From the IMG/VR virus record IMGVR_UViG_3300028654_000384, positions 62,001 through 126,000 of that record: a stretch of 64,000 nt of DNA; one strand, written 5' to 3'. Of the stretch, positions 23,082-59,736 are shown piece after piece. Under the pieces are notes generated by a model. It worked only from the letters and a program-made list of their open reading frames with translations, was not told the DNA's origin and ran no database searches. Position 1 is the stretch's first letter. Each line of letters opens with the position of its first letter. The translations under genes were made by a program, and so were the position numbers.

Positions 23082-23090
23082 GAGAACACC

Positions 23091-23710: not shown

Positions 23711-23711
23711 G

Positions 23712-24296: not shown

Positions 24297-24553
24297 AACC
24301 CGGCGATCTCATCGCGCGGGTGTACGAATCTGACGGCGTTACAGCACTTCGTAGAGAAGAATTGTTATCATCGGTGACGGGCGATTACGTGCCCATTGGG
24401 GGCATTCACCTGTTGATCAGCTATGTCGATGGAATATTGACATGGTTGCCTTTGGGTGCAAACTGCAACGAGTTGTTTAGTGCGGACGAGAACGACACCG
24501 AAGCCGGCATTGCAGGCGACGACGTCATCTACGTACACGTGAGCCTGACATGA
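24293..24553 (+). CDS. MKPGDL-family small protein, paralog 2
   Basis: MKPGDLI..YVPIGGIHLL..DGILTWLPLG. Confidence 0.75.
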   Translation: MKPGDLIARVYESDGVTALRREELLSSVTGDYVPIGGIHLLISYVDGILTWLPLGANCNELFSADENDTEAGIAGDDVIYVHVSLT

Positions 24554-24840: not shown

Positions 24841-24869
24841 TCGATGATCCACCGTGGTATGATCAGTAG

Positions 24870-26566: not shown

Positions 26567-26579
26567 TACTTATGCCAAA

Positions 26580-26891
26580 GTGATGAAGAAGCTACAGGAA
26601 GTCGACGTCATTCGCATCATGCGCGAGGAATGGTCAGCGAAGGTCAAGACCCTTGCCGAGGAGGTTGACGTCGTCATGAACTCCAAGGTGAAGGATGGTA
26701 GCACGGTGGGGGTGCTCTCGCCGGGATTAAAGATAAAACATAAACAAAGTGGGATTTTGTACACCGTCATGTCCGTCGGCCCACGTGATGTGCTGATCAG
26801 GCCGCCCGATGGAGACCCAAATGGATCAATTAGTGACACTGCGATGCTCGTCGATGCTGCTGAGCTAGAGCAGTCCTACAAGCTTGACTGA
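26580..26891 (+). CDS. Hypothetical protein with tag-like N-terminus
   Basis: VIRIMREEW; TACTTA at 26567. Confidence 0.7.
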   Translation: MMKKLQEVDVIRIMREEWSAKVKTLAEEVDVVMNSKVKDGSTVGVLSPGLKIKHKQSGILYTVMSVGPRDVLIRPPDGDPNGSISDTAMLVDAAELEQSYKLD

Positions 26892-26910
26892 AATTGGGAG
26901 ATCAATACGA

Positions 26911-27639
26911 ATGGCACAGCACGATAAAGAAGACCAGTTGACCGATCTCCTCAAGGGCGTCGACATCAAGGGCATCGTCAATGGCGCGTTGCAGAAGGGT
27001 GGTGCTGTCGCTGCCCCCATCGACGAGGCCTACGTGGCGCAGCCCAAGCCCTACTCGCAGGTGACGGAGTTCGTGTCCCAGAAGACGAAGGACGCCCACA
27101 CGTCGCTGTACCAGAAGTACGTCGAGACGTTGAACCGGGTGTCTGCTGAACTCGACACTGCTTCGAAGTCGGAAGCCAACAGCAACCACTCCGACTTCAG
27201 GAGCCTGAAGCTTGATGAGACGCGGTTGCTGAACGCGGTTTGGCTACATGAACTTTACTTCGCCAACTGCTTTGACGTTCATAGTGAGTGCTACATGAAT
27301 TCCATGGCGTACATCCGCCTGGAACGTGACTTCGGCACCTTTGAGGACGCACAGCAGGACATGATGGCATGTGCGCTGGCCTGCGGTGAGGGCTGGATGA
27401 TCACCGCCTACAACATGTTCCTCAAACGCTACGTCAACGTCATGGTCACCGACAACAGCCACGACGTGATGTTGGGGCTGTACCCGATCATCGTCATCGA
27501 CATGCATGCTCACGCGTACTTCAAGGACTACCTGACTGACAAGAAGAGCTACCTCGTAGCGATGATGCGCCAGCTCAACTGGAACGTCATCGAAGAGCGG
27601 TTCACCAAGGCTGAATCGATTGCCGAGGTGGTCAAGTGA
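26911..27639 (+). CDS. Fe/Mn superoxide dismutase-like protein with N-terminal extension
   Basis: AH..LY..Y, LHELYF, FGTFE, GEGW, IDMHAHAYF.DY, NW..IE.RF. Confidence 0.8.
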   Translation: MAQHDKEDQLTDLLKGVDIKGIVNGALQKGGAVAAPIDEAYVAQPKPYSQVTEFVSQKTKDAHTSLYQKYVETLNRVSAELDTASKSEANSNHSDFRSLKLDETRLLNAVWLHELYFANCFDVHSECYMNSMAYIRLERDFGTFEDAQQDMMACALACGEGWMITAYNMFLKRYVNVMVTDNSHDVMLGLYPIIVIDMHAHAYFKDYLTDKKSYLVAMMRQLNWNVIEERFTKAESIAEVVK

Positions 27640-30034: not shown

Positions 30035-30406
30035 ATGGCAAACTTGTGGATCAAGGATCAGAACGGCGATCCCAGCGTCATTGTGACACTGGTCGCGGTG
30101 TCGTTTGTGGCGGTGACAGTGGGCTACGTGATGTCGCTGTTCGATCGCATCGGCACCGTGTCAATCAGGCCCTTCGACGTCGCGGCGTGTGGTGCTTATT
30201 TCGGGAGCGTGATGGCCGCCTTCGTGGGCCACCATTGGGTGACGACCAAGTACGTCAATGGTCAAGTCGTCACCGATGATTCGTCGGCGACCGTCACCAC
30301 GACCCAATCAGGCAGCGGTAACACCGTCACCGCGACGACTGATGCAACGTCGACGACCACGACGATGCCAGTGGTGCCAGGAACGAACCCCGGGGTCACG
30401 ACATGA
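30035..30406 (+). CDS. Two-TM membrane protein (holin-like?)
   Basis: Hydrophobic segments, Thr-rich tail, TATTTA at 30010. Confidence 0.5.
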   Translation: MANLWIKDQNGDPSVIVTLVAVSFVAVTVGYVMSLFDRIGTVSIRPFDVAACGAYFGSVMAAFVGHHWVTTKYVNGQVVTDDSSATVTTTQSGSGNTVTATTDATSTTTTMPVVPGTNPGVTT

Positions 30407-31623
30407 CGACCATTGTCACCGACGATGCCCTCCGCGAGATGGTGCGCGAGGCGCTCTCCAACACGGGCTGGAGCAATGAGGACGCGGGCACTGCCAACGT
30501 CAACCCCGTCGTCGATCCGTCGAAGGCCGTCACCGACCCCGTCAACCCCAACTTCACGCCCCAGACCAAGACCGAGTTCGGCGTGGCGATCAATCAGCTA
30601 GTCAGGAACCTACCCGACACCGAGATGCCCGACCTGTATGGCGTCGTCAAGAAGACGCTAGACCAGCGGACTGAAAAAGAAGAGGAACAAGCGATGGACA
30701 AGAAGGCAGTGCAAGGCGGTTCTCAAGAAGCGATCGATGACGCGAAGAAGAAGCAAGCTGAGGCGGTGATCCGCAAGGCCGTCCGCAAGGCGCTGGCTGA
30801 GGCACCCCTGCCCCCGGTCAAGAAGATCCCGATCGGTGTCCACGGCAAGGAATTCAACGATCGGGTCGAGAAGACGAAGGCCGGCCTCAAGAAGTCGTTG
30901 GGCACCGCGGCGGCTGAACTCGATAAGCCTGATCAAGAAGAACTTGATGCTGTTGCCGATGGCGGTAATGCACCTAAAGGGCGCAACAAGGCATACAAGC
31001 CCGGCGCGTTGGGGGGCATGCAGGACGTCGGCGGTCAGTCGTTTGAGGCCATTGCCAAGGAAGTGGGCATGTCGGTCGCCGGTGCCAAGCAGCTCGTCGA
31101 CAAGTCACTGGAGAAGTTGAAGTGGCTGCACCGCCTGCCCGAAGACGACCGTGACATCCTGATCCTCACCACCGCCAACGACTACATCAAGACGCTGGCG
31201 CAATCGGGCGAGCTGACGGCGCCCGACATTCAACTGATGAAGGATCACCCGACGATCGTCACCGAGCTCGACGGTTTCCGCGAGTACCTGCACGACGTCA
31301 TCACCAAGGCACGCAAGCCCGGCAAGAAAATCAACGCCTTCGGCGAGGGGACGGAGGCCGACGAGGTCAACCAGCTCAACGAGTCCGCCAAACGCTTGGT
31401 CACCACGTTGACCGAGGTCATCGGCAACCACGCCGTGGTGCAGGCCGACATGCGAGGCCCCTACATCGTCATCGAGGGCCGCGAAGCCCGCCCGCGTGAT
31501 CCCAACAAGACGCAGTACGCCGCGGGCACCAAGGTGCGAGTGCACCAGCGGGCCAGCAAGGGCGTGTCATTGGTGGAGATGCCCAACGGGGAACAGTGGA
31601 CATTGAAGGGCATGAAGGGCTAA
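30403..31623 (+). CDS. Tagged protein with sigma-region-4-like HTH
   Basis: LREMVREAL; SFEAIAKEVGMSVAGAKQLVDKSLEKL. Confidence 0.6.
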   Translation: MTTIVTDDALREMVREALSNTGWSNEDAGTANVNPVVDPSKAVTDPVNPNFTPQTKTEFGVAINQLVRNLPDTEMPDLYGVVKKTLDQRTEKEEEQAMDKKAVQGGSQEAIDDAKKKQAEAVIRKAVRKALAEAPLPPVKKIPIGVHGKEFNDRVEKTKAGLKKSLGTAAAELDKPDQEELDAVADGGNAPKGRNKAYKPGALGGMQDVGGQSFEAIAKEVGMSVAGAKQLVDKSLEKLKWLHRLPEDDRDILILTTANDYIKTLAQSGELTAPDIQLMKDHPTIVTELDGFREYLHDVITKARKPGKKINAFGEGTEADEVNQLNESAKRLVTTLTEVIGNHAVVQADMRGPYIVIEGREARPRDPNKTQYAAGTKVRVHQRASKGVSLVEMPNGEQWTLKGMKG

Positions 31624-36211: not shown

Positions 36212-37480
36212 GTGGGAGGTGCGAGCGGGCATCTTCGACATTTGCACGACAACCTCGACCTGACGTTCGGGGAGTTGAAGGATGTGTTGTCGTCGGCGGC
36301 CGATGGCAAGCTCGAGCGCACCAGTGAAAAACTCGACGGGATCAACCTAGTCTTCACGTGGGCGGGTGATCAACTGAAAGTAGCCCGCTCGGGCGGTGAC
36401 ATCAAGAGCGGCGGCATGGACGCTGTAGGTCTGGCGACCAAGTTTCAGGGGCGCGGCAACCTGGCCGACGCCTTCAACGGTGCCTTCAAGGTGCTCCGCG
36501 ACGCGGTGGGCTCGCTGAGCGACGCCGTCCGAGCCAAGGTCTTCAACGACGGCCGCACCTGGTACTCGATTGAGGTCATCTACTCCAAGAATCCCAACGT
36601 CATCAACTATGACGCCAACTACGTTGTCTTCCACGCCAGTCCCGTCTTCCACGTCTCACGCGCCGGCGAGGTCAAGAAGCTCGACTCTGCTCCCGGCGTG
36701 GCCTTGTTGGAGAAGCACGTCGACAACATGCAGCGTGCCCTGACGCAGCGTAGTTGGCAGGTCAGGGGCCCGGCTCTGGTTCGCCTCAAGAAGCTGAGCG
36801 ACGGCAACGCCGTCAAACGTGCCTTCACCATGATCGGTCAGGCACAGTCGATCGCCGGAGTGGGTGACGATGATACCCTCGGCGATTACCTCGCGGCGCG
36901 GATGACTGATGAAGTCGCGGGGCTCGACCTGCCACCCAAGGTCGCCAAAGCGGTGACGGCTCGGGCGGTGGGCAACCCGGGCGCACCGTCGTTGCTCAAC
37001 CTGAAGAAGCTCGTCTCGCCCGACCAATATGCCGCCGTCAATCACTTTGTCAAGGCATCGCCGGGCCTGCTGAAGAAGTTCATTGAGCCCATCGAGCGTG
37101 CCGTCCATGAGTTTGCGATTGAGGCCCTGCGTGGCATGCACTCCACGCTCATCGGCAACAACGACGCCGAGGTGCAGCGCCTGCGGGGTGAGGTCGCCCG
37201 GGCCGTCAAGGCGATTGAAGCCAGCGGCGACGCCACGGCGATGGACGTGTTGCAGAAGCAGATGACGAAGTTGGGTAGCATCGAGAATGTCAGCAGCGCG
37301 ATGGAGGGCGTTGTCTTCACGTGGAAGGGCAACTCATATAAGTTCACGGGTGGGTTTGCGCCTGCCAACCAGATCCTCGGCCTGTTCAAGTACGGGCGCA
37401 AGGGCGTAAAGATCCCCGTTCAAGAGGCCTATTTAAGGCACGCGGTCGCTCGGTTGGTCGCCAATGGGAGACACAGATGA
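36212..37480 (+). CDS. Ligase-superfamily covalent nucleotidyltransferase-like protein (DUF6267-like)
   Basis: GGASGHLRHLHD start; motif I EKLDG, motif IV EGVV, motif V-like YKFTG. Confidence 0.65.
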   Translation: MGGASGHLRHLHDNLDLTFGELKDVLSSAADGKLERTSEKLDGINLVFTWAGDQLKVARSGGDIKSGGMDAVGLATKFQGRGNLADAFNGAFKVLRDAVGSLSDAVRAKVFNDGRTWYSIEVIYSKNPNVINYDANYVVFHASPVFHVSRAGEVKKLDSAPGVALLEKHVDNMQRALTQRSWQVRGPALVRLKKLSDGNAVKRAFTMIGQAQSIAGVGDDDTLGDYLAARMTDEVAGLDLPPKVAKAVTARAVGNPGAPSLLNLKKLVSPDQYAAVNHFVKASPGLLKKFIEPIERAVHEFAIEALRGMHSTLIGNNDAEVQRLRGEVARAVKAIEASGDATAMDVLQKQMTKLGSIENVSSAMEGVVFTWKGNSYKFTGGFAPANQILGLFKYGRKGVKIPVQEAYLRHAVARLVANGRHR

Positions 37481-38336: not shown

Positions 38337-39152
38337 ATGCACTATCGAGACACCGTTTGGTACACCAGCGCGGTCATGGACTTGAATGCTGAGATTGAGG
38401 ACCTTGAGGCCCAAAAGTCGCAGCTAGCCGGCATCAAGTCCAACCTGCGCACGAAGACACAAAAAAACGTCCTGTTGAGCGTCAAGAATCGCCTGAAGAA
38501 GAGGCATAAGTGGGCTCACAAGCTGGAGATGGGTGACCTATCGTACTTCAAGGCATACGAGCTAATCAGGATACTGGCGGAGCTTGAAGGTCGGTTGTGG
38601 TCACCTGCCGAATGCGCCACGTTGGGAGAACCGCGCGCATTGCACGAGGGCCCGGGCGAGAAGGCGATCAAGATGCGGTTGGGTCTAACGCTATCATCGT
38701 CTACTGGCAGAGACCTGCCCAATGGCGAGATCAAGTGGCTCGACAATGGTAAAGGCTCATTACAGGCGATGCAGGTGTCGCTGTGCGGTCAGAAAGCATG
38801 GGGCGCCTTCATCTTTGAACAGGCGGAAGCGGGCCTGTTCAGGGGTCTTGACCCCACTGTCAGGCAGGCGCTCAAGGACGGTGAAGTGCCCAAAAGGATG
38901 ATCGACGTGCTACCTCTCAACGTTCACCGTGAGCTATGCATGGCAGTCTTGCCGGCAAAGGTGCTGGCGGGTTACGGTGACATCTACTGTGCCTTCAATT
39001 TCGGTTACATCGTAGTGCCTGCCGATGACCTCAATGCCTGGCGTTTAACAGGCATCTCCAAGGGCCGACCACGCTATGCACTGAACATTGACTATGTCGT
39101 CATTAAGTTGCTGATCTCATCGTCCGAGCAGCAACTTGACGTAGTGGCGTAG
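38337..39152 (+). CDS. Hypothetical protein
   Basis: ORF after promoter and ribosome site. Confidence 0.65.
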   Translation: MHYRDTVWYTSAVMDLNAEIEDLEAQKSQLAGIKSNLRTKTQKNVLLSVKNRLKKRHKWAHKLEMGDLSYFKAYELIRILAELEGRLWSPAECATLGEPRALHEGPGEKAIKMRLGLTLSSSTGRDLPNGEIKWLDNGKGSLQAMQVSLCGQKAWGAFIFEQAEAGLFRGLDPTVRQALKDGEVPKRMIDVLPLNVHRELCMAVLPAKVLAGYGDIYCAFNFGYIVVPADDLNAWRLTGISKGRPRYALNIDYVVIKLLISSSEQQLDVVA

Positions 39153-39749
39153 CAGCGCCTCGGCGCGGGGCTTGCGAGCCCTGTCGGTCGTCTTGATGTC
39201 CTTGGGCGGGTCTTTCGCTCGGGCCGACAATACGTTCCACACTAGGTCGCGGTCGATGGCTTTGGGCAGGTGCTTGGTGAAGTTGGCCTTGTCACCCGCT
39301 CCGAGCCATTGCCGCATCTGGGTGCCCGACACGTTGACGGTCTGTGACCGCTCGATGGGCCGGAGTTTAATCTGCCCGTGGGCGAGAAGGTTGCCTGCAT
39401 ACTTGCTCAAGGTGGCGTAGTTGGCCTTCAGGTCGTCGGGGTCGGAGTAGATGTTGAAGGTGTCAGTGGAACCTGCTGTGTCGGCATCGCCCAATTCTTT
39501 GTAGACGTGGCCGATGGGTGAGCCACCGTAGGTGACGGTGACGTTGGCGGGTAGACTGGGCTCGATCGTCTCGTCCCACAGCTTCTTCATGTCGGCGCCG
39601 ACGATGGGCACCTCACCCGGCCGCGCCCGATCGCTCAACGACACGTAGAGGTGCACTTCATCGTTGTTGCGCGCGGCGATGTTGACAAGGGCACTATGGC
39701 CAGCCTGCCAGGGCTTGAATGATCCCGCGATGATGCCGATCTTTGCCAA
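39117..39749 (-). CDS. HxGH-class (cytidylyl/adenylyl) nucleotidyltransferase-like protein
   Basis: IIAGSFKPWQAGH, VSGTQMR; TACTTA upstream. Confidence 0.8.
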   Translation of the reverse strand: MAKIGIIAGSFKPWQAGHSALVNIAARNNDEVHLYVSLSDRARPGEVPIVGADMKKLWDETIEPSLPANVTVTYGGSPIGHVYKELGDADTAGSTDTFNIYSDPDDLKANYATLSKYAGNLLAHGQIKLRPIERSQTVNVSGTQMRQWLGAGDKANFTKHLPKAIDRDLVWNVLSARAKDPPKDIKTTDRARKPRAEALLRHYVKLLLGR

Positions 39750-40521: not shown

Positions 40522-41562
40522 ATGGCGTCCGACAAACTGCTACGTGAGTTCATCAGTGAGGTGGTGCTGCTCACTGAGGAGGGCGAAGGTGGGGGTGAAT
40601 ACGCTGACTTATCAATGGCAGATGCTACGGGCAGTCCCTACGGCATGTCGTTCGGCTCCAACGACGACCTCTACAACACCTTCGTCAAACCCTTCACCGA
40701 CGTGGTGGGCGTGGCCGCGGGCAAGACCAAGGCCCTGTCACAGAAGGGTCAAACCCTGGTACGCGTTGCCTTCGAGGCCGTGGCCACGACGCTGGTGCCC
40801 ATCCTCCGCGACTCCTACGGCGAGATCTTCGAGAAGGAGAAAGAGGAACTCGACAAGATTCGTCGTGACTACCACGACGTCTTTCAGGCCACTTGGGATG
40901 CCTTCGAAGACCACGATGCGTTGCTGGCCGCATTCCTCCATGCGCCGGCGTCGTTCATCACGTCGCGATTGGCCAAGCAATCACCCAAGGTCGTCATCAA
41001 GATGATCAGCGTGCTGACGGGCGGCACCCTCGACACGTGGCTCGATAAGGTGAAGAACGCCTTCGGTGTCGAGGGTGGCCCATCAGGTGCCAACAAGCCG
41101 GTGCACGGTGGTGACAGTGGGCCCATGGAGAGCACCCTGCATGAGGATGGGGGTAACCACCCACCCATTGAGCAGGTGCTGACCAGCGACAAGGTGAGGG
41201 CCCGTGTCGCCGATGCGCCGGTGACCAAGAAGTTGCAGCAACGTGGGACGGAGATCACGCGCGGCACCCTGGAGAAGGTCTACAAGCAGGCCAAGGGGGT
41301 GTTGGGTGCCAAGTCGCTGGAGCAATTGCAACAGTTGGTGCATAGACCGCTCAAGGGCCTCGACAAGATGAAGGGCGTCCCACAACAGGAGCGTCAGGCG
41401 GCGGAACAGCAGATCTTGGCGGCGGCGAAAAAGTCGATGCGTGAATTCTACACGAAAAACCTCGAGGGTCAGGTGAAGCAGGCGCTCGACCAGGGAGTGC
41501 CCGACGACTCGCCTTATATCAGTGACTACCGGCGCGTCATCAGCAAAATCAAAGCACTGTGA
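40522..41562 (+). CDS. Tagged hypothetical (putative virion) protein
   Basis: MASDKLLREFISEV; TACTTA at 40510. Confidence 0.75.
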   Translation: MASDKLLREFISEVVLLTEEGEGGGEYADLSMADATGSPYGMSFGSNDDLYNTFVKPFTDVVGVAAGKTKALSQKGQTLVRVAFEAVATTLVPILRDSYGEIFEKEKEELDKIRRDYHDVFQATWDAFEDHDALLAAFLHAPASFITSRLAKQSPKVVIKMISVLTGGTLDTWLDKVKNAFGVEGGPSGANKPVHGGDSGPMESTLHEDGGNHPPIEQVLTSDKVRARVADAPVTKKLQQRGTEITRGTLEKVYKQAKGVLGAKSLEQLQQLVHRPLKGLDKMKGVPQQERQAAEQQILAAAKKSMREFYTKNLEGQVKQALDQGVPDDSPYISDYRRVISKIKAL

Positions 41563-41953: not shown

Positions 41954-42235
41954 ATGGCAAAGACAGCACCCGCAAAAGCAGTCGCAGAGATGATGCCCGA
42001 CGAGATCACCGCCTTGCGCGCCGTGGTCAACGACTTCATGGGCCAAGTGAGTTCGATCGACAACGAGATTGAGACCCTGAAGGGGGATCGCAAAGAAGTC
42101 ATCGAGTCCTTCAAAGACAAGCTCGATATGAAGACGTTGCAGACTGCGCTGAAGGTCATCAAGCTCCAGAACAGCATTGCGCACAAGGATGCCTATGACT
42201 TGTTCATGGAAGTCCTCGGCGATCCGGCCCAATGA
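41954..42235 (+). CDS. GapR/DUF2312 (T4 DsbA-like) DNA-binding protein
   Basis: LR..V..F......ID.EIE.LK.DRKEV..S.K...D.KTL. Confidence 0.65.
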   Translation: MAKTAPAKAVAEMMPDEITALRAVVNDFMGQVSSIDNEIETLKGDRKEVIESFKDKLDMKTLQTALKVIKLQNSIAHKDAYDLFMEVLGDPAQ

Positions 42236-42444
42236 ACCGCGGCACCGCCTGCAATGACTGCATCAGGTGTGCAGAGATCAAGGTCGCCGCACGTGGGGTG
42301 CGCGCCACTCTTCTTGAACCTGAGTTGAATCGCATGTTCCTGTGTCCGACGTGTGGCAACAAGCGGTGTCCCAAGGCAACCTACCACGACAACAAGTGCA
42401 CCGGCTCCAATGCGCCCGGACAGGAAGGCAGCGACTACAAATGA
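42232..42444 (+). CDS. Small Cys-rich protein
   Basis: CNDCIRC, CPTCGNKRCPKATYH. Confidence 0.6.
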   Translation: MNRGTACNDCIRCAEIKVAARGVRATLLEPELNRMFLCPTCGNKRCPKATYHDNKCTGSNAPGQEGSDYK

Positions 42445-43976
42445 GTGCCGATATTGAGTGGGATAAATCGGTGATCTTGAACGCTGACAATGAACATCTC
42501 CTTGCTTTGCCAGTCATGTCGTTCATCAAGGGATTGGTCGAGCGGTACGGCGCTAGCGTTGACACGTGTCTCGATGCCCGCAAGCACCGCAGCATCGTTG
42601 ACTGCGACTTCGCTCGTTCACCCGAGGAGCTCGACTCATCATGGCGTGCGGCACCCCCACCTGCCGACCTCATCGATCGCCGCGTCGAGATCACCGGGCC
42701 GCCCACCCGCAAGGGCGTCATCAATGCTCTCAATTCGGGCGCTGACGTCTTCATGGCCGACTTTGAGGACTCATGCTCACCGACGTGGGACAACCTGATC
42801 AGTGGTCAGGTCAATCTCTTCAATGCCGTTCGTCGCACCATTACCTACGACGATCCTACGACGGGCAAACACTACTCGCTCAATGACAAGCCAGCGGTGT
42901 TGATGGTCAGGCCCCGGGGCTGGCACCTCAAGGAGAAGCACGTCAGGCTCGATGGCAAGCCCGTGCCTGCGGCCCTGGTCGACTTCGGTCTCTATGTCTT
43001 CAACAATGCACACGAACTGTTGTCACGTGGGTCAGGCCCGTATCTGTACCTGCCCAAGATGGAGAGTCACCACGAGGCGAAGCTGTGGGACGATGTCTGT
43101 TCCTACGCAGAGCAGGTACTCAACCTGCCCATGGGCGCCATTCGCACGACGTGCCTGATCGAGACGCTGCCTGCCGCCTTCTGTATGGACCGCATCATCT
43201 ACGCCCTCCGCGACCGCATCGTGGGCCTCAACTGCGGGCGCTGGGACTACATCTTCTCCTTCATCAAGAAGCGCCACGATGACCCGAGCGCGGTGTTACC
43301 CGATCGCTCGCTGTTGACGATGGACAAGGCATTCCTCAACGCCTACGATGAGCTGTTGGTGCAGACGTGCCACAAGCGCGGCATCCACGCGATGGGCGGC
43401 ATGGCGGCGCAGATCCCGATCAAGGGCAATGCCGAGGCCAATGACGTCGCCATGGAGAAGGTACACACCGACAAGTTGCGTGAAGCAGCGATGGGCCACG
43501 ACGGCACTTGGGTCGCCCACCCGGGTCTGATCCAGATCGCTCGTGAGGCCTTCAAGGACTGCGGGCCCAATCAGATCGATCGGCCACGCACCAATCGACC
43601 CATCACTCGCGACGAGCTGTTGTTGGTGCCGTCAGGTCCCTGCACCGAGGAAGGCCTGCGCCACAACATCAGGGTTGGCATCCAATACCTCGAGGCGTGG
43701 TTGAGCGGCAATGGCTGCGTGCCCCTGTACAACCTGATGGAGGACGCGGCGACGGCCGAGATCTCACGTGCCCAAATATGGCAGCAACTACACCACGGTG
43801 CGATCGTCGGCGGGCGCCCACTGACCTACGTCAGGTTGGCGGACATCATCAGCCAAGAAACAATGCCACTGGTGGGCGCGCGGATCGACGATGCGATCAG
43901 GTTGTTCATGAAGGTTGCATGCGACCCGCACGAGTTCACCGACTTTCTGACGCTGCCCGCCTACGACATGCTGTAA
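42441..43976 (+). CDS. aceB: Malate synthase A
   Basis: RRVEITGP, NALNSGADVFMADFEDS, VRPRGWHL, YLPKMES, LIETLPA, GLNCGRWDY, MGGMAA, GHDGTWVAHP, LMEDAATAEISRAQ. Confidence 0.95.
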   Translation: MSADIEWDKSVILNADNEHLLALPVMSFIKGLVERYGASVDTCLDARKHRSIVDCDFARSPEELDSSWRAAPPPADLIDRRVEITGPPTRKGVINALNSGADVFMADFEDSCSPTWDNLISGQVNLFNAVRRTITYDDPTTGKHYSLNDKPAVLMVRPRGWHLKEKHVRLDGKPVPAALVDFGLYVFNNAHELLSRGSGPYLYLPKMESHHEAKLWDDVCSYAEQVLNLPMGAIRTTCLIETLPAAFCMDRIIYALRDRIVGLNCGRWDYIFSFIKKRHDDPSAVLPDRSLLTMDKAFLNAYDELLVQTCHKRGIHAMGGMAAQIPIKGNAEANDVAMEKVHTDKLREAAMGHDGTWVAHPGLIQIAREAFKDCGPNQIDRPRTNRPITRDELLLVPSGPCTEEGLRHNIRVGIQYLEAWLSGNGCVPLYNLMEDAATAEISRAQIWQQLHHGAIVGGRPLTYVRLADIISQETMPLVGARIDDAIRLFMKVACDPHEFTDFLTLPAYDML

Positions 43977-43991
43977 ACAGAGAGGTGCGAC

Positions 43992-45374
43992 ATGGATGAC
44001 ATCAAACGACCCTACACTCCCGCTGACGTCAAGCGCCTGCAGGGCCGCACCCGAATCGTACACTCGCTGGCCGAGAATGGTGCCGGTCGATTACGTGCTA
44101 TGATGGTGAACCAATCCGTGCGGGCGTTGGGAGCGCAGACTGGCAACCAAGCGGTGCAGATGGTCAAGGCAGGATTGAAAGCCATATATGCGTCAGGTTG
44201 GCAAGTTGCCGCCGACGCCAACACGTCAGGCCAGACCTACCCAGATCAGTCACTGTACCCCGTCGACAGCGTGCCCACCCTGGTCAGGCGCATCAACAAT
44301 GCACTGCTCCGTGCCGAGCAGATCGATGCGATGGAAGAGGCAGATGGCCAACGCAGCGAGAATCATCGTCACTGGTTAGCGCCCATCGTTGCAGATGCTG
44401 AGGCAGGCTTTGGCGGTCACCTCAACACCTATGAACTTGTCAAGGCGTTGATCGAGGCCGGTGCGGCAGGCATTCACCTCGAGGATCAGCTGTCGAGCGC
44501 GAAAAAATGCGGGCATTTAAATGGGAAAGTGCTCATCCCGACGTCTCAAGCGATCAACAACCTCGTCGCCGCCCGCCTCGCTGCCGACGTGCTCGAGGTG
44601 CCGACGGTCATCATTGCTCGCACCGATGCACTGAGTGCGCAATTGATAACCAGTGATATTGACGAACGAGATCGCCAGTTCGTTGCACCAACTAGTCGCA
44701 CTTCGGAAGGTTTCTACCACCTGACGGGCGATCCCATGCAGCGGACGATCGCTCGTGGCCTCGCCTATGCGCCCTACGCCGACCTGCTGTGGTTCGAGAC
44801 GTCAACGCCCGATTTGGCGCAAGCCAAGCAATTCGCTGAGGCGATCCACGCACAGTTCCCGGGCAAGCAGTTGGCCTTCAATTGTTCGCCGTCGTTCAAG
44901 TGGCGCAAGCACCTGACGGACGATCAGATCGCCTCGTTTCAGGATGACCTACACGCGATGGGTTATGTCTTCCTCTTTGTAACCCTCGCGGGTTGGCACG
45001 CCAATGCCAGCAGCGTCTTCGAACTGGCGCTCGATTATCACCAGCGTGGCATGGGTGCCTACGTCAAGTTGCAGGATCGGGAATTCACGCTCGAACAAGC
45101 GGGCTACACCGCCGTCAAGCACCAGCGCGAAGCCGGCACCTCATACTTCGACGCGATCGTTAGTGTCATCACCGGCGGTACTTCGTCGACGTTAGCGATG
45201 AAGGGCTCGACTGAGGCCGAGCAGTTCTCTGAACATGCAACCCCGTACGGGGTAGGATTACCCTATGGCGAAGAAGTCGAAGAAGAAGCGGGAAAAGACG
45301 GTGGTGTGCACGGATGTCGGGCAAGCGAAGTTCGCGCCCCAGCAGACGTACGCCCTGACGCTGACCCGGTTTGA
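43992..45374 (+). CDS. aceA: Isocitrate lyase
   Basis: [72 protein letters not shown]. Confidence 0.95.
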
Positions 45375-46298
45375 GGTCCTCCACCTACGCGACCTGTTTA
45401 GCATCACGTTGCCCACCGACGTCAAGCAGACGGTGAGCCAGGGATTGGCCGCCGTCGAGGATCGAGAGATCGTCGAAGCCAAGCTGTGGCGCAAGGTCGC
45501 CACCTTGTGTCAAGCGGCGGCAGTGCCGACTGACGATGCGGCCCCTGACTTCGTCTGCGCGGCGTCGCAGGCACCCCCGGTCGGCGTCTTCAGGCTGGCG
45601 CACGATCCGCAGGAGGGTCAGGAGAATCAGTCACCAACCGGGAGCGTGTTGGATAACATCGTGACCGGTGATGAGAACGTTGATGATCCGGGTGACGACG
45701 ACCCGTTCATGGGCGCCACGCCGTCATGGCCCACCGGTGAACCGATCGGACAACGTACACCAAAGAAGGCGAAGCAGCCGTGACCGCCTACAAGATCGGC
45801 CAGCTGATCTATGTGGTTCTTCGTGGCCAGAACACGGTGTACCCGATGATGATCACCGAGGTCATCAGCAAGCAGACGATGGAAGGTGACAGCATCACCT
45901 ACATGGTCGCCGGGGGTTCAGGTACGGGCGCGCAGGTACTGCCGATCGACAAGGTAGACGGTGAGATCTTCACGTCGGCGGCCGAAGTCAAGCGGATGTT
46001 ACTCGAGCGGGCGACCAACGGCATCAACCAGCTGGTCAACAACGCCGTCACTAAGGCGAAGGAGTGGTACCCGACTGCAACAGAAGCGACGACTGAGGGG
46101 TGGAAGTCCAATACTGAACCTCCTCACAAGAGCATCCATGCGCCTGGGCCGCAGATCAAGGCGCGAGGTGCCAAGTCGACCAAGGCGCGCGAAGAAGTGC
46201 CGCCCGTGACTGAAGAATTACCCGTCGATGGTGATGGCGTCACAGTGCAGATGCCCGACGGCACTGTCGCCCGCGTCAAGCTACCCGCCTCGATGTGA
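45265..46298 (+). CDS. Two hypothetical proteins (45265-45783, 45780-46298)
   Basis: ORF track; TAGGAT 6 nt before ATG 45265. Confidence 0.7.
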
Positions 46299-55413: not shown

Positions 55414-55884
55414 GTGAACATCTTCGTCGTCGATGAAGATCCAATTCTGGCCGCGCGCGACCTGTGCAACAAACACGTGGTCAAAATGTTGCTGGAGAGC
55501 GCTCAACTGCTAGTCACCGCTTTCCCACCCGGGACTACGCGCTACAAGCACACGCACGTCAATCACCCGTGTGCCAAGTGGGTGCGCGCATCATTGTCGA
55601 ACTATGAGTGGCTGTTGAAGCACGCTTGTGAGCTCTGCAATGAATACACGCGGCGTTACGGCAAAGTTCACAAGACCGAGGAAGTGATCGCTTCGCTCGA
55701 AGAAGCTCCCACGCTCGATGATGTCGGGTTGACGTCCTTCGTGCAGGCAATGCCCGACAAGTACAAGGGACCCAATGCAGTCGCGGCATACCGCGCCTAT
55801 TACGTCGGTGACAAGGCACGCTTTGCCAAGTGGGCACCTCGTGCTGTGCCTCCTACGTGGTGGCCTCATGAGGAGACACCGTGA
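55414..55884 (+). CDS. Pyrimidine-dimer DNA glycosylase (DenV-like family)
   Basis: MNIF.VD.DP..AA..L..KHVVKM.LESAQLL, THVNHPC.KW.R....NY.WL. Confidence 0.75.
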   Translation: MNIFVVDEDPILAARDLCNKHVVKMLLESAQLLVTAFPPGTTRYKHTHVNHPCAKWVRASLSNYEWLLKHACELCNEYTRRYGKVHKTEEVIASLEEAPTLDDVGLTSFVQAMPDKYKGPNAVAAYRAYYVGDKARFAKWAPRAVPPTWWPHEETP

Positions 55885-56050
55885 AAAATACGGGCTTCTT
55901 TCTCCGCTTTCTTCGTGGGTTCACGTGCAAACACGAGTGGGGCAACGTCGTCGAAATCGTTCACGACGAAGGTGACCTCATTCGCGACTGGCTCGGTTCG
56001 AGCTACACCAGACACACGTACATCTGCAATCAGTGTGGCAAGGAAAAGAC

Positions 56051-57115
56051 ATGGACACGTTGACGAAAGAGCCTGGTTTCACCCGTTCACTGCGGGAAGA
56101 GTTGGTGCAGGTGTCGCCCGACTTTCAGGTTCGGGTGCACCGGCCGGGGGCGTTGTCCGACGCTGAGTTGATGGCACTGACGATGCGGCACGATGCTGAC
56201 CCGGCGATGTATCACCCGGAGCCCGTTAATGCCAGTGGAGTATCGATCCTGGGCGACGTCACCCCTGCCGACGAGGCGATGGGCATGAGCGCGATCAAAC
56301 GCGGTGAAGTTGCCATGGTGGTACTGGCGGGCCGGGCCCCCAAGTTGCTTGCCAAGATCCCGGGCGTTGACACCAGCATGCTGGCGTGGAAGCTGATGCA
56401 GGGCGGCGACATGCCCGTGTGGATCATGGTGGCGCCTGACCAATTGGCGCCGGCGGAGCACCACATCAAGCAATTGGTGCTGTCACCCAACCTCAGGGGC
56501 ACCCTCTTCACGCAGTTCGAGGGGTACCGCCTGACACCCGACAATAGGATGGCATGGGTGGCACCGGGGGTGCCCGACTTGGGCCCGTTGGGCAACGGTG
56601 ACCTGGGCCCGGCACTGCACGAGGCAGGCATCCTCGCCGAACACCCCAACGTCAAGTGGGTCTTCATCTGCAACGTCGACAACGTCATGGCGTCGCCGCA
56701 CGAGGGCCTCATCGGCCTTCACATCAGGCACCGGGCACCCATCACCTGTGAGGTCGTCGACCTGCACCCGGACGATCGGGGCGGCGTGCTGGCTCGCGTC
56801 GAGGGTTATCGTCAGCTCGCCGAGGATTGGCGGTTACCGTCAGGTTTTGCGAAGCCGGGCATGTTCTATAGCACTAACACCATGCTCGTCAACGTCGAGG
56901 TGTTGCAGACCCACTTTGCATGGCGCTGGCACCGCATCCGGCGGGAAGTGGGCAATCGACTGGTGGTGCAGCACGAGCGCTTGCTCCAGCAGTACACCGA
57001 GGAATTCGGTGCCGTCTACGTGCGGGTACCGAGGGACATGCGGTACGTGTCGGCCAAGACGACGGCGGGTCTCGAAGAAGCGGGTAAGGCAATCCTACGA
57101 ACGAGGCACCCATGA
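56051..57115 (+). CDS. UDP-sugar pyrophosphorylase (UGP/UAP, UDPGP family)-like
   Basis: VAMVVLAG, TQFEG, PLGNGDL...L..AG, FICNVDN, GGVL, STNT. Confidence 0.7.
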   Translation: MDTLTKEPGFTRSLREELVQVSPDFQVRVHRPGALSDAELMALTMRHDADPAMYHPEPVNASGVSILGDVTPADEAMGMSAIKRGEVAMVVLAGRAPKLLAKIPGVDTSMLAWKLMQGGDMPVWIMVAPDQLAPAEHHIKQLVLSPNLRGTLFTQFEGYRLTPDNRMAWVAPGVPDLGPLGNGDLGPALHEAGILAEHPNVKWVFICNVDNVMASPHEGLIGLHIRHRAPITCEVVDLHPDDRGGVLARVEGYRQLAEDWRLPSGFAKPGMFYSTNTMLVNVEVLQTHFAWRWHRIRREVGNRLVVQHERLLQQYTEEFGAVYVRVPRDMRYVSAKTTAGLEEAGKAILRTRHP

Positions 57116-57468
57116 TCCTCTCACTCGTCGCTGTCGTGGCGGCATCGGCATTCGGTTCTGTCGTCATCATCACCAAGTCGGCGCTGGCATTCGCCAACGT
57201 CTTCGACAAGCGCGAGCGTGAAGACGACAGTGGCGTGAAGCTGTACCCATTCGAGCACGTGGTCAATGGAAAAACTCGCTGTGTAGTGTGTGGTTACTAC
57301 GCTAGTAATGCCACTAGTGGCAATCCTGCATTGGGACCAGGGGCACCGCGTGCGTGCGAGGATGATACTTGCAGTGCTCGGTGGGATGACATCGCTCACC
57401 TTCACATGACGTGTCGTTCGTGCCGCAGCGCGTGGTTGATGAGGACGGCACCGGCTGACCTCACGTGA
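57112..57468 (+). CDS. Membrane-anchored zinc-ribbon protein
   Basis: N-terminal TM; CVVC, C..C, CRSC. Confidence 0.6.
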   Translation: MILSLVAVVAASAFGSVVIITKSALAFANVFDKREREDDSGVKLYPFEHVVNGKTRCVVCGYYASNATSGNPALGPGAPRACEDDTCSARWDDIAHLHMTCRSCRSAWLMRTAPADLT

Positions 57469-57884
57469 GGATACCACCCGTTTCACCCTACGGCCTCATT
57501 CAGGAGACGCTGTGGCCCGACGAATGGTTGATCCTCGTCACCGGCACCATGCTCAATTGCACCACGCGCAAGCAGGTTGAACGGGTGCTGCCCGACTTTC
57601 GTTGTCGGTGGCCCACCCCTCAGGTCTTTGTCACCGCCTCATACGACGACGTCTTTGAGTTGATCAAGCCACTGGGTTTCGGCAACAGGCGCACGGGCAA
57701 CCTGTTGAAGATGACGCGTGCCTACCTGATGACCGACTGGCACCACGCCCGTGAACTGCCCGGCGTCGGCGAGTACGGTGCACGCAGTTGGGAGATCTTC
57801 TGCTTGGGCGTGTTGGGCACGACGCCACCGAAGGATCATGCCTTGCTACAGTATTGGGACTGGGCGGTGACCTTACCGAGCTGA
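57465..57884 (+). CDS. MBD4-like HhH DNA glycosylase
   Basis: PYGLIQE.LW...W..L...MLN.T, LIKPLG, LPGVGEYG..SW.IFC, catalytic-position PKDHAL..YW.W. Confidence 0.8.
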   Translation: MRIPPVSPYGLIQETLWPDEWLILVTGTMLNCTTRKQVERVLPDFRCRWPTPQVFVTASYDDVFELIKPLGFGNRRTGNLLKMTRAYLMTDWHHARELPGVGEYGARSWEIFCLGVLGTTPPKDHALLQYWDWAVTLPS

Positions 57885-58748
57885 CAACGGGCCGATGATC
57901 TTGTTGTGCTCGAGGAAGCCACGAATGGTGTCGTGGCAGGTGAACAGCGAGATGTCAGGCACGTTCCTCTTGAAGCTGTCGGCGGTGCCGATGAGGTCGC
58001 CTGCAGCATTGAAGGCCGGGCCACCCGAGTTGCCGAAGAAGACGGCCGCTGACACCTGCACGTAGTCGTGAGGTTTACCTTCATTGTTGGTGTACTCTGA
58101 CAGGTGCCCCGACACGTAACCGTGGGTGTATGTCCACCACATGCCCGCCGGCATGCCGATGATGTGAACCTCGTCGCCAGGTGAAGGTGTGGTCGACATC
58201 AGGTGAGCAATGGGATGATCACCAGGATCCTTGACGCGGATCAACGCTAGGTCATTGTACATGTCGACGGCGATGCACGCGCTGTCATGGTACGTTTGTT
58301 GTGAGTCGGCGATGTCGCCGCGCGTTGAGTATATCACGGGTTGACCCACCGGCGTCCACTCCGTCAACTGAGGAGGCGGTGCCGTCGTCACTCCGTTGAT
58401 CTGGTCGATCATTTGTTTCAGGATCGCCGTCGCGTCGAGCGGTGGCTTAGCGTCGGCGGGCTTGCCGATGTCATCAATGCAGTGTTCGGCCGTCAGGATG
58501 ACGTTGGCACTGACCCACACGCCGGTGCAGTAGGAGTGCAGCTTGGCACCGCGCCCTGCGTTGATCGGCTCGATGACGTTGCCCTCACTGTCGGCGTAGT
58601 GTACCAGGGCGACGGTCTCATACTCCAGTTGGGCGATCATCTCGGCATGTGTCAATGGAGGTGGTGTAGCAATGGTGATGTAGTGGTAGGCATGTGTACA
58701 GCAAGCGGGTAGAAAGGCAATGCCCAACCAGGCCAACAACTTCTTCAT
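57873..58748 (-). CDS. Trypsin-like serine protease with lipoprotein-type leader
   Basis: LTAEHC, DLALI, GNSGGP; leader ..LPACC. Confidence 0.9.
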   Translation of the reverse strand: MKKLLAWLGIAFLPACCTHAYHYITIATPPPLTHAEMIAQLEYETVALVHYADSEGNVIEPINAGRGAKLHSYCTGVWVSANVILTAEHCIDDIGKPADAKPPLDATAILKQMIDQINGVTTAPPPQLTEWTPVGQPVIYSTRGDIADSQQTYHDSACIAVDMYNDLALIRVKDPGDHPIAHLMSTTPSPGDEVHIIGMPAGMWWTYTHGYVSGHLSEYTNNEGKPHDYVQVSAAVFFGNSGGPAFNAAGDLIGTADSFKRNVPDISLFTCHDTIRGFLEHNKIIGPLSAR

Positions 58749-58881
58749 TCACTGCACCTCTGATCTATACTATGGCGTCTCGTGCGCACCTACACCACAT
58801 TGTCACCGGGATGTAACACAATGAACGGGGAGCGTGTACGGGTGTGATGTCATACAGTAGAGTGTTGAATGGAGCACTACA

Positions 58882-59736
58882 ATGCCAGAGGGACCTGAAC
58901 TTCGAAAAAGTCGCGATGACCTACAATTCTTGGTCGGTCGCTACATCACCCGCGTTGAGGCGGTGGGCGGACGCTATGCGAAGGTGCCGCCCGTTGGTCT
59001 CAACGACTTCACTGGCTCAAGCAAATGTGCCGAGTGCCTCTACCTGAAGGAGTACGGTCGCATCGAGGAAGTCGAGGTCAAGGGCAAGTTCATGTGGTGG
59101 AGCATTCGAGCGGCGTGGTCGCTGTGGTGCACCTACGGCATGACGGGCAGGTGGAGCACCACCCGAGACGATAAGCACTGTGCTGTGGTGCTGACCCACC
59201 GTGGTGCTGCAGGCGACGAGGCCTGCGTCTACTTCAATGATCCACGGCACTTCGGCACCCTGAAGTTCGTCTATGACCGTGACGGCGACAAGACGCAGGC
59301 CAAGCTCGACGCGCTGGGTCCCGACATGTTGGGCTCACCGCCGGCCCCTGAACAATTCATCGCCCGGCTGGGCAAGAAACCCAATCGCACCCTGGCCGAG
59401 GCGCTGATGGACCAATCTGTCGTCTCGGGAGTGGGCAATTACGTCAAGGCCGAGGGCCTCTACATGGCCGCACTATCGCCACACCGCACCGTCGCCGAGT
59501 GTTCGGTCGCCGAACTGATGCACTTGGGCACGCGGTTGACCCAGGTCATGATGGAATCGTACACGTCTGGTGGCGCGACGATCAGCACCTACCGCACCGT
59601 CGACGGCACCAAAGGTGGGGCGCAGCGACGCTTTGCGGTGTATGGTAATATGACGGACCCGATGGGTCACCCGGTGATCAAAGAGGCGACCAAGGACGGG
59701 CGCACTACCCACTGGTGCCCGGCGATCCAAAAGTGA
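58882..59736 (+). CDS. Fpg/Nei DNA glycosylase
   Basis: MPEGPE, KGKF, GMTG, NDPRHFG, LGPD, DQSVVSGVGN, GRTTHWCP. Confidence 0.9.
   Translation: MPEGPELRKSRDDLQFLVGRYITRVEAVGGRYAKVPPVGLNDFTGSSKCAECLYLKEYGRIEEVEVKGKFMWWSIRAAWSLWCTYGMTGRWSTTRDDKHCAVVLTHRGAAGDEACVYFNDPRHFGTLKFVYDRDGDKTQAKLDALGPDMLGSPPAPEQFIARLGKKPNRTLAEALMDQSVVSGVGNYVKAEGLYMAALSPHRTVAECSVAELMHLGTRLTQVMMESYTSGGATISTYRTVDGTKGGAQRRFAVYGNMTDPMGHPVIKEATKDGRTTHWCPAIQK

What the first reader, a model, noticed from the sequence alone, without database searches (positions are those of the whole stretch)
42441..45374. Complete glyoxylate shunt (aceB-aceA) in a phage genome
Seen: full-length malate synthase A and isocitrate lyase with intact catalytic motifs (GLNCGRWDY, KKCGH), 15 nt apart. 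They have phage-like codon usage and phage-type genes on both sides; no aceK. Established: the pair bypasses the decarboxylating TCA steps and allows net carbon gain from acetyl-CoA. Inference: an auxiliary metabolic module that routes lipid or acetate carbon into nucleotide precursors during infection. A two-gene central-carbon bypass is unusual cargo for a phage.
Basis: partly seen in the sequence, partly recalled or inferred. Interest (0 to 1): 0.75.

Follow-up and report, generated by a model that had tools for sequence, protein, structure and literature searches.

The report
Glyoxylate-shunt gene pair in huge phage
A roughly 359-kb soil-type phage really does carry intact malate synthase and isocitrate lyase genes side by side, but phages with this pair have been reported before, and in this phage's own family the pair is an optional cargo that is often reduced to isocitrate lyase alone or lost.

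Summary
aceB (42441-43976, 511 aa) and aceA (43992-45374, 460 aa) lie 15 nt apart. Both score above NCBIfam's equivalog cut-offs and keep every catalytic motif checked.

They are not an assembly artefact. The locus is 100% identical in at least 23 contigs from many JGI and ENA samples, three of them about 359-361 kb. Codon use matches the neighbouring genes. The nearest cellular homologues are only about 60% (AceB) and 66-67% (AceA) identical.

The neighbouring genes are phage-type, but I saw no capsid or terminase gene in the 79 kb examined.

Using a conserved neighbouring gene as a marker, I found a family of huge phages with one fixed cargo site. That site holds aceB-aceA in 5 lineages, aceA alone in about 13, nothing in about 26, and a deletion remnant in one. 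Phage AceB and the main phage AceA group each form one clade, which points to old capture followed by repeated loss.

Most phage isocitrate lyases in this clade also carry a disordered C-terminal tail with a short conserved motif. Its function is unknown.

Phage-borne aceBA was already reported in 2017 and in a 2025 survey of huge phages. This is therefore a new member of a known kind. The proposed metabolic role is plausible but untested.

The parts
40522..41562 (+). Conserved backbone gene (346 aa, no known family). I used it as the marker to find family members whether or not they carry aceBA.
   Evidence: 46-60% identical in six relatives that share the gene order. It recovered 19 IMG/VR and 50 metagenome loci.
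41954..42235 (+). Conserved 93-aa gene that forms the left border of the cargo site.
   Evidence: Present at 57-65% identity immediately upstream of aceB, of aceA, or of the empty site in all nine loci compared. Its homologue in L120 has a weak GapR_DNA-bd hit.
42232..42444 (+). 70-aa Cys-rich small ORF with CxxC-type pairs. Its stop overlaps the aceB start (ATGA).
   Evidence: Translation and sequence. Among the nine loci compared, a homologue was found only in L160 (72%), which has no aceBA.
42441..43976 (+). aceB, malate synthase A (511 aa).
   Evidence: TIGR01344 at 670.9 bits against a 594.5 cut-off. Pfam MS_TIM-barrel plus MS_C. Aligns over residues 15-511 to PDB 3cux and 56-511 to 3cuz. 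R157/R159, E241, D269 and D435 are invariant in 5 phage-clade sequences.
43977..43991 (+). 15-nt spacer with a GAGAGG Shine-Dalgarno-like site for aceA.
   Evidence: Sequence read.
43992..45227 (+). aceA, catalytic core of isocitrate lyase (residues 1-412).
   Evidence: NF011645 at 647.6 bits against a 562 cut-off; the PrpB model scores only 96 bits against a 354 cut-off. Aligns over residues 4-412 to PDB 6lrp at E 1.9e-163. SGW68, D135/E137, H162/E164, K171/C173/G174/H175 of the KKCGH loop (K172 is R in one), R210, N297/S299/S301 and T331 are invariant in 25 phage-clade sequences. The AlphaFold2 model is confident over most of the core.
45228..45374 (+). C-terminal tail of AceA (residues 413-460 plus the stop codon), predicted disordered.
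   Evidence: pLDDT is below 50 for residues 414-459. Most phage-clade enzymes have tails of 10-91 residues, whereas bacterial relatives have 6-7. The tails share a motif of the form [TS]EH, 3-5 residues, [VI]G[SL]x[HY]G.
45409..45783 (+). Conserved 124-aa gene that forms the right border of the cargo site.
   Evidence: Called in the JGI contigs. Homologues follow aceA, or the empty site, in 7 of 9 loci compared.

Best explanation
The window is a slice of a huge phage of about 359 kb. At a fixed site in a conserved backbone, this phage carries a two-gene cassette: malate synthase A followed by isocitrate lyase.

Shown:
- Both proteins are full-length members of their enzyme families, with every catalytic and metal-binding motif I checked intact.
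- They are co-oriented and tightly packed with the flanking phage genes.
- They have taken on phage base composition.
- They belong to phage-only clades, so the capture from bacteria was old rather than recent. AceB affiliates weakly with Myxococcota.
- In the phage family the cassette is optional: complete in 5 lineages, isocitrate lyase alone in about 13, absent in about 26, and a deletion remnant in one.

Inferred:
- The genes are transcribed with the surrounding replication and nucleotide-metabolism genes.
- Their products give the infected cell extra glyoxylate-bypass capacity that host regulators do not control.
- Isocitrate is then split to succinate and glyoxylate instead of losing two CO2, and glyoxylate plus acetyl-CoA gives malate.
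- This saves carbon and feeds C4 acids, and so aspartate and gluconeogenesis, towards the nucleotides and sugars that a very large phage genome needs when the host lives on C2 or lipid carbon.
- Isocitrate lyase is the branch-point step and is the part most often kept. Malate synthase is dispensable where the host supplies its own.
For: - Enzyme identity.
- Real linkage to the phage: DNA 100% identical across both junctions in IMG/VR, JGI and ENA contigs from many samples, including contigs of 359,321, 359,340 and 361,059 bp with the locus at different positions. aceB's ATG overlaps the upstream ORF's stop.
- Composition: GC and codon use lie within the window's range, while Myxococcota homologues have GC3 of 0.93-0.97.
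- Phage context: DnaE-like polymerase, homing endonucleases, ThyA, thymidine kinase, dCMP deaminase, 5'-3' exonuclease, Phage_lysozyme (PHROG endolysin at 4e-50), T4 endonuclease V-type Pyr_excise, and a DUF6267 protein whose look-alike clusters are 97-100% Uroviricota. 86 of 112 ORFs are on one strand, and there are no tRNA or Rfam hits.
- Old capture: the nearest cellular AceB is at most 60% identical and AceA about 66-67%. The phage AceB clade has SH-aLRT support of 99 and the main phage AceA clade 98-99.
- Cassette at a fixed site and repeatedly lost.
- Precedent: PMC5332604 and 10.1101/2025.02.27.640493.
Against: - There is no expression, activity or host information.
- The promoter and terminator scans found nothing above chance near the genes, so the transcription unit is only inferred from gene packing.
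- No capsid, portal or terminase gene was seen in the 79 kb examined, so 'phage' rests on IMG/VR's classification and on non-structural phage-type genes.
- Frequent loss in relatives shows the cassette is not essential.
- The 48-residue tail follows directly on the C-terminus, which in solved isocitrate lyases closes over the neighbouring subunit's active site (my knowledge of the Mycobacterium and E. coli structures). An effect on activity therefore cannot be excluded.
- The link to nucleotide supply is circumstantial.
Confidence: 0.6

Rival explanations
1. The pair is host DNA joined to phage DNA by mis-assembly or contamination.
For: The genes are of bacterial type and in the usual bacterial aceB-aceA order: 48 of 53 cellular loci with both genes have this order. 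Several 'phage' database records with these genes are obviously bacterial contigs.
Against: - At least 23 contigs from different samples and assemblers are 100% identical across both junctions.
- Relatives only 45-70% identical in protein sequence keep the same gene order.
- Composition matches the neighbours.
- No cellular homologue is more than about 60% (AceB) or 67% (AceA) identical.
Confidence: 0.02
2. The replicon is not a phage but a plasmid or another large mobile element, so this is ordinary accessory metabolism.
For: No structural or packaging gene was found in the 79 kb examined. Chaperonin, superoxide dismutase and sugar-nucleotide genes also occur on plasmids.
Against: - Two contigs are IMG/VR viral genomes, and related contigs are in IMG/VR as well.
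- The region has Phage_lysozyme, Pyr_excise, HNH and GIY-YIG homing endonucleases, and a DUF6267 family seen almost only in Uroviricota.
- Genes are dense, on one strand and mostly without known relatives.
- No plasmid replication or conjugation genes were seen.
Confidence: 0.07
3. The enzymes are active, but the benefit is redox or stress relief, or better survival of a slowly growing or pseudolysogenic host, rather than carbon supply for nucleotides. The bypass makes less NADH and so less oxidative stress.
For: An Fe/Mn superoxide dismutase, a chaperonin and several DNA-repair glycosylases are encoded nearby. The 2017 paper proposed a host-fitness role during a provirus phase. The link between the glyoxylate shunt and oxidative-stress tolerance is my own knowledge of the bacterial literature.
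Against: No integrase or repressor was seen in the window. The genes sit among replication and nucleotide genes, not in a moron-like position with its own promoter. The two roles do not exclude each other.
Confidence: 0.22
4. Isocitrate lyase is the real cargo and serves another purpose, such as methylisocitrate lyase activity in propionate detoxification or production of glyoxylate or succinate as such. Malate synthase is only a leftover passenger.
For: Isocitrate lyase alone is about three times more common than the pair in this family and about 4.5 times more common in the huge-phage survey. Some bacterial isocitrate lyases also cleave methylisocitrate (my knowledge, Mycobacterium ICL1).
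Against: AceB's catalytic residues are invariant across five phage lineages that are only 59-66% identical overall. That indicates selection on malate synthase function wherever it is kept. The PrpB model scores far below its cut-off.
Confidence: 0.09

Closest known systems
aceBA operon of the marine environmental viral genome TARA_ERS478052_N000008 (179 kb; Nishimura et al. 2017, PMC5332604)
   Same: Adjacent aceB-aceA in a large tailed-phage-like genome, interpreted as an auxiliary metabolic module. IMG/VR holds a group of such contigs, including L012 at 178 kb. I did not check whether L012 is that genome.
   Different: A different lineage. Those AceB and AceA sequences are 49-52% and 60-63% identical to the window's and fall in other clades. 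The published example is marine; the habitat of the window's family was not checked.
Isocitrate lyase and malate synthase genes of the Huge Phage Genome Collection (bioRxiv 10.1101/2025.02.27.640493)
   Same: Huge phages of 200 kb or more carry isocitrate lyase (98 genes) and, less often, malate synthase (22 genes), adjacent in 20 genomes. Phages encoding malate synthase came from marine, soil and plant-related habitats. The window fits this description and may be one of those genomes.
   Different: I could not confirm that this genome is in that set; its sample ids were not found in the supplementary text that is held. As far as I read it (passages matching my search terms), the preprint reports counts and does not mention the fixed cargo site, the repeated loss or the C-terminal tail.
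Bacterial aceBAK / aceBA glyoxylate-bypass operon (E. coli type; Myxococcota aceB-aceA loci)
   Same: Same two enzymes, same gene order and close spacing. 48 of 53 cellular loci that have both genes adjacent show this order. Same catalytic residues.
   Different: - No aceK and no regulator gene nearby.
- Embedded in phage genes.
- AceB's N-terminal domain is too diverged for Pfam MS_N to detect.
- AceA lacks about 20 N-terminal residues and gains a 48-residue disordered tail.
Glyoxylate-cycle genes of giant viruses (Mimiviridae; reviewed in PMC9270025)
   Same: Virus-encoded malate synthase and isocitrate lyase, reported as expressed in marine metatranscriptomes. Giant-virus genome bins with malate synthase also appear in IMG/VR.
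   Different: These are viruses of eukaryotes. Their malate synthases are 40-48% identical to the window's and have no adjacent aceA in the fetched loci. The acquisitions are unrelated.

Membership tests
Malate synthase A (TIGR01344, EC 2.3.3.9) | Whole-protein score above the curated equivalog cut-off | tested here: met
   670.9 bits against a 594.5 cut-off. The malate synthase G models score only 22-37 bits.
Malate synthase A (TIGR01344, EC 2.3.3.9) | TIM-barrel domain plus C-terminal plug domain, full length | tested here: met
   PF01274 over residues 153-394 and PF20659 over 402-510. Aligns over residues 15-511 to 3cux. The N-terminal Pfam domain is not detected, but the TIGRFAM alignment starts at residue 25.
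Malate synthase A (TIGR01344, EC 2.3.3.9) | Catalytic Arg and Asp and the Mg2+ ligands Glu and Asp (residue roles from my knowledge of the E. coli MSA structure papers) | tested here: met
   R157/R159 in RPRGWHL, E241 in LIETL, D269 in GRWDY and D435 in MEDAAT align to identical residues in 3cuz and 3cux. They are invariant in 5 phage sequences.
Malate synthase A (TIGR01344, EC 2.3.3.9) | Condenses glyoxylate and acetyl-CoA to malate | not testable with these tools
   Needs an enzyme assay or complementation.
Isocitrate lyase (NF011645 / TIGR01346, EC 4.1.3.1) | Whole-protein score above the curated equivalog cut-off, and not a methylisocitrate lyase | tested here: met
   647.6 bits against 562, and 529.6 against 275.9. 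PrpB scores 96.3 against 354.4.
Isocitrate lyase (NF011645 / TIGR01346, EC 4.1.3.1) | KKCGH catalytic loop plus metal and substrate ligands | tested here: met
   KKCGH at 171-175, SGW at 68-70, D135/E137, H162/E164, R210, N297/S299/S301 and T331. These residues are invariant in 25 clade members, except K172, which is R in one, and identical in the alignment to 6lrp and 7cmx.
Isocitrate lyase (NF011645 / TIGR01346, EC 4.1.3.1) | Canonical C-terminus ending at, or a few residues after, ...EQF | tested here: not met
   48 extra residues, against 6-7 in bacterial relatives. The extension is predicted disordered. I treat it as a variation on the family, not as grounds for exclusion.
Isocitrate lyase (NF011645 / TIGR01346, EC 4.1.3.1) | Cleaves isocitrate to succinate and glyoxylate | not testable with these tools
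   Needs an enzyme assay or complementation.
Phage auxiliary metabolic gene | Lies inside a viral genome with viral genes on both sides, not at a contig edge | tested here: met
   The locus is tens of kb from the contig ends in the ~359-kb contigs. Upstream are a DUF6267 protein, NUDIX and DnaE; downstream are a 5'-3' exonuclease, Phage_lysozyme and Pyr_excise. Caveat: no structural gene was seen.
Phage auxiliary metabolic gene | Linkage is reproducible and not an assembly chimera | tested here: met
   At least 23 contigs have identical DNA. Diverged relatives share the gene order.
Phage auxiliary metabolic gene | Cellular origin of a metabolic gene | tested here: met
   In the trees the phage clades sit among, or beside, bacterial AceB and AceA sequences.
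Phage auxiliary metabolic gene | Expressed during infection and alters host metabolism | not testable with these tools
   No transcript data and no known host.
Enterobacterial aceBAK operon | aceK (isocitrate dehydrogenase kinase/phosphatase) downstream of aceA | tested here: not met
   No AceK family appears among the Pfam hits on record for the called genes over 79 kb. The gene after aceA is a 124-aa protein with no known relatives.

The most novel reading that the evidence does not exclude
The conserved, disordered C-terminal tail of the phage-clade isocitrate lyases (motif [TS]EH, 3-5 residues, [VI]G[SL]x[HY]G, then an acidic variable stretch) could be a phage-specific control or docking element. 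It might tether the enzyme to a phage or host partner, or free it from host control. On this reading isocitrate lyase, not the full shunt, is the selected function of this cargo site, and malate synthase is an add-on kept only for hosts that lack their own.
Probability: 0.15. Interest if true: 0.6.

Novelty: new member of a known kind. Interest (0 to 1): 0.4.

Why it matters
Virus-encoded central-carbon enzymes change how infected cells process carbon. No phage-encoded isocitrate lyase or malate synthase turned up as biochemically tested in the literature I could search.

This locus is a clean candidate for such a test. Both genes are intact, the linkage is reproducible, and close relatives provide natural controls: pair, lyase only, none, and a remnant. 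These let one ask what each gene contributes.

The presence/absence pattern also shows that the benefit is conditional. That matters for anyone who counts such genes in viromes as evidence of a fixed viral metabolic strategy.

Tried and rejected
- Megablast of the locus against deposited phage genomes found nothing.
- tblastn there gave mostly bacterial contigs filed as phage, plus one 156-kb phage (C48C1) with an unannotated isocitrate lyase.
- The DnaE-like polymerase has only 25-30% identical phage relatives, so no cultured relative was identified.
- Promoter and terminator scans were at chance level. There were no tRNAs and no Rfam families.
- I looked for hallmark structural genes by PHROG scans of about 40 ORFs and by reading 10 kb beyond each window end. 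None was found.
- An Atlas search of the 406-aa ORF at 30403-31623 was uninformative, with scores of 0.58 or less.
- The huge-phage preprint's supplementary text did not contain this genome's sample ids.
- I considered independent gains of aceB to explain its patchy distribution and rejected the idea, because the phage AceB sequences form a single clade.
- Exchange of the cassette between related phages cannot be separated from loss with single-gene trees. The AceA and marker trees disagree on the placement of L134, with modest support.
- I did not attempt dN/dS because synonymous sites are saturated at 60-70% protein identity.
- The 'careful' AceA tree did not finish in time, so the quick tree was used.
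Full report
**What is in the sequence**

The finding spans two adjacent + strand ORFs. The first runs from an ATG at 42441 to a TAA at 43974-43976 and encodes 511 aa. Its ATG overlaps the stop of a 70-aa upstream ORF as ATGA. The second is 43992-45374 and encodes 460 aa. It lies 15 nt downstream, and the spacer contains GAGAGG 7 nt before the ATG.

The first protein matches Pfam MS_TIM-barrel and MS_C. It scores 670.9 bits on NCBIfam TIGR01344 (malate synthase A), above the 594.5 cut-off. The second matches Pfam ICL and scores 647.6 bits on NF011645 (isocitrate lyase), above the 562 cut-off. Its score on the methylisocitrate lyase model is only 96 bits against a 354 cut-off.

Both align almost end to end with solved structures. 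AceA residues 4-412 align to 6lrp at E 1.9e-163. AceB residues 15-511 align to 3cux at E 1.3e-160.

The motifs that carry catalysis and metal binding are all present:
- AceA: [36 protein letters not shown].
- AceB: RPRGWHL, LIETL, GLNCGRWDY, MEDAATAEISR.

The assignment of roles to these residues comes from my knowledge of the structure papers.

**Is it an assembly artefact?**

It is not, as far as sequence data can show.
- Window 32441-55371 is 100% identical to two IMG/VR viral contigs of 102.8 and 215.9 kb.
- The exact AceB protein occurs on at least 23 contigs from several JGI samples and several ENA assemblies. All fetched copies are 99.99-100% identical to the window across both junctions.
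- Three contigs are 359,321, 359,340 and 361,059 bp long with the locus at different positions. This suggests a complete circular or circularly permuted genome of about 359 kb.
- GC content does not change at the locus.
- GC3 and codon use of both genes lie within the range of the window's other genes. Myxococcota homologues have GC3 of 0.93-0.97.
- The nearest cellular proteins are only about 60% (AceB) and 66-67% (AceA) identical.

**Is it a phage?**

The 79 kb I could annotate (the window plus parts of both flanks) contains the following:
- Replication and mobile endonucleases: a DnaE-like polymerase, and GIY-YIG, HNH and TnsA-like endonucleases.
- Nucleotide metabolism: ThyA, thymidine kinase, dCMP deaminase, a CCA-adding enzyme, two NUDIX hydrolases and a 5'-3' exonuclease.
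- Lysis: Phage_lysozyme (PHROG endolysin at 4e-50) and a C1 peptidase.
- DNA modification and repair: a T4 endonuclease V-type glycosylase and DNA methyltransferases.
- A chaperonin.

The 422-aa protein 5 kb upstream of aceB belongs to DUF6267. Its look-alike clusters are 97-100% Uroviricota, with a feature score of 0.97 and TM-scores of 0.79-0.82. 86 of 112 ORFs are on one strand and most have no known family. There are no tRNA or Rfam hits.

I did not see a capsid, portal or terminase gene, so a small doubt remains.

**A phage family with a fixed cargo site**

The closest AceB and AceA proteins in the large protein database sit on contigs with the same gene order as the window. That order is CN-hydrolase, Pterin_4a, NUDIX, a 346-aa gene, a 93-aa gene, [aceB], aceA, EamA, 5'-3' exonuclease, lysozyme.

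I used the 346-aa neighbour (40522-41562) as a marker that does not depend on the cargo. It recovered 19 IMG/VR and 50 metagenome loci.

After removing duplicates, and counting only loci with enough downstream sequence, the site between the 93-aa gene and the 124-aa or 172-aa genes holds:
- aceB-aceA in 5 lineages (window, L120, L124, L125, L200);
- aceA alone in about 13;
- nothing in about 26, with clean junctions, for example in L131 and L135;
- a remnant in one, L137. There an aceB fragment (residues 19-102) abuts an aceA fragment (residues 203-415) in another frame, so both have lost their catalytic parts.

**How the cassette evolved**

The cargo states are scattered over the marker tree. 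The window (pair), L126 (lyase only) and L131 (none) form one clade with support 100/97.

Phage AceB sequences nevertheless form a single clade (SH-aLRT 99). That clade is nested, with weak support (85), among Myxococcota sequences. All AceA sequences from loci whose marker is at least 43% identical form a single clade (98-99).

The simplest reading is one old capture, followed by repeated deletion of aceB or of both genes. Exchange between related phages at the homologous site is a possible contributor that I cannot exclude.

A more distant sub-family (L145, L182, L187 and the 278-kb contig L029) carries an AceA of a separate clade. In L145, L182 and L187 it lies about 1.2 kb downstream of the marker; the position in L029 was not checked.

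All catalytic motifs are essentially invariant across 25 phage-clade AceA sequences (one K172R) and invariant in 5 AceB sequences. These sequences are otherwise only 59-77% identical to the window's proteins. This indicates selection for enzyme function wherever the genes are kept.

**The tail**

Bacterial relatives end 6-7 residues after ...EQF. Most phage-clade enzymes continue for 10-91 residues; the window's continues for 48.

The extension starts with a recognisable motif of the form [TS]EH, 3-5 residues, [VI]G[SL]x[HY]G. It continues as an acidic, Pro/Ala-rich stretch, and some members have a second EGPVQH-like motif. AlphaFold2 models most of the core confidently and gives residues 414-459 a pLDDT below 50.

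The function of the tail is unknown. Because the normal C-terminus helps close the neighbouring active site (my knowledge of the structures), an effect on activity is conceivable.

**Mechanism**

What is shown is two intact enzymes, in operon-like arrangement, inside a block of replication and nucleotide-metabolism genes.

What is inferred is as follows. The genes are co-transcribed with that block. They add glyoxylate-bypass capacity that host regulators do not control. The bypass conserves carbon and supplies C4 acids for aspartate, gluconeogenesis and so nucleotide and sugar synthesis, for a very large genome in hosts that use C2 or lipid carbon.

The family pattern suggests that isocitrate lyase, the branch-point enzyme, is the main selected part. 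It also suggests that malate synthase is dispensable where the host provides one.

A redox or stress role is a serious alternative and is compatible with the first. The nearby superoxide dismutase, chaperonin and repair genes fit it.

**Comparison with what is known**

- aceA and aceB were detected in ocean viromes in 2013 (PMC4053976).
- An aceBA operon in a complete 179-kb marine viral genome was described in 2017 (PMC5332604).
- Giant viruses of eukaryotes carry and express both genes (PMC9270025).
- IMG/VR holds further lineages with the pair.

The window is therefore a new, or possibly already counted, member of a known kind. The fixed cargo site, the repeated erosion with a caught-in-the-act remnant, and the clade-typical tail do not appear in the passages I read (matches to 'isocitrate lyase', 'malate synthase' and 'glyoxylate'). 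They are modest additions.

**Verdict**

Novelty is 'new member of a known kind' and interest is about 0.4.

Noticed in passing
window 12752-13699 and 18338-19363: Two low-GC genes (GC 0.41 and 0.49, against 0.59 for the window) encode HNH/TnsA-like and homing endonucleases. They account for the GC dips at 12-15 kb and 17-19 kb, and look like recently arrived mobile endonuclease genes near the DnaE-like polymerase.
   Followed up: partly
window 7352-7861 and 7865-11566: A GIY-YIG homing endonuclease gene sits directly upstream of the 1233-aa DnaE-like DNA polymerase III alpha gene. The gene caller starts the polymerase later, giving 1178 aa.
   Followed up: no
window 21159-27639: A nucleotide and stress block: ThyA (21159-21914), thymidine kinase (23712-24296), CCA-adding enzyme (24870-26009), dCMP deaminase (26006-26566) and an Fe/Mn superoxide dismutase (about 26911-27639).
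   Followed up: partly
window 55414-59736: A DNA-repair and sugar-nucleotide cluster: T4 endonuclease V-type Pyr_excise (55414-55884), UDP-glucose pyrophosphorylase (56051-57115), an HhH-GPD glycosylase (57465-57884), a trypsin-like protease on the minus strand, and a Fapy-DNA glycosylase (58882-59736).
   Followed up: no
window 36212-37480: A 422-aa protein of the DUF6267 family. Its look-alike clusters are almost all Uroviricota, and its structural neighbours are fused to cytidylyltransferase domains or resemble RNA ligases.
   Followed up: partly
L137 9350-10247 (IMGVR_UViG_3300037501_000232): A deletion remnant of the cassette. A 98-aa ORF matches AceB residues 19-102 and is followed, in another frame, by a 209-aa ORF matching AceA residues 203-415. 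Its closest relatives, L160 and L162, have an empty site.
   Followed up: yes
L104 (GTDB MAG contig, 253,203 bp) and L003/L004 (IMG/VR, 80 and 252 kb): A contig binned into a bacterial genome groups tightly with two IMG/VR contigs in the AceB tree. L003 and L004 carry the pair in the reverse order, aceA then aceB. L104 may be a huge phage binned as a bacterium.
   Followed up: no
L145, L182, L187, L029: Distant members of the same phage family (marker 31-35% identical in L145, L182 and L187) carry an isocitrate lyase of a separate, tight clade, which also holds the lyase of the 278-kb contig L029. In those three it lies about 1.2 kb downstream of the marker. This may be a second acquisition at or near the same site.
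   Followed up: partly
GenBank OQ984149.1 (Phage C48C1, 156 kb) 44181-45452: A deposited phage genome encodes a protein 54.5% identical to the window's isocitrate lyase but annotates it only as hypothetical.
   Followed up: no
window 39117-39749 (minus strand): The only conserved minus-strand gene in this block. Its homologues in related phages have weak or faint hits to Citrate_ly_lig, a nucleotidyltransferase-type domain.
   Followed up: no
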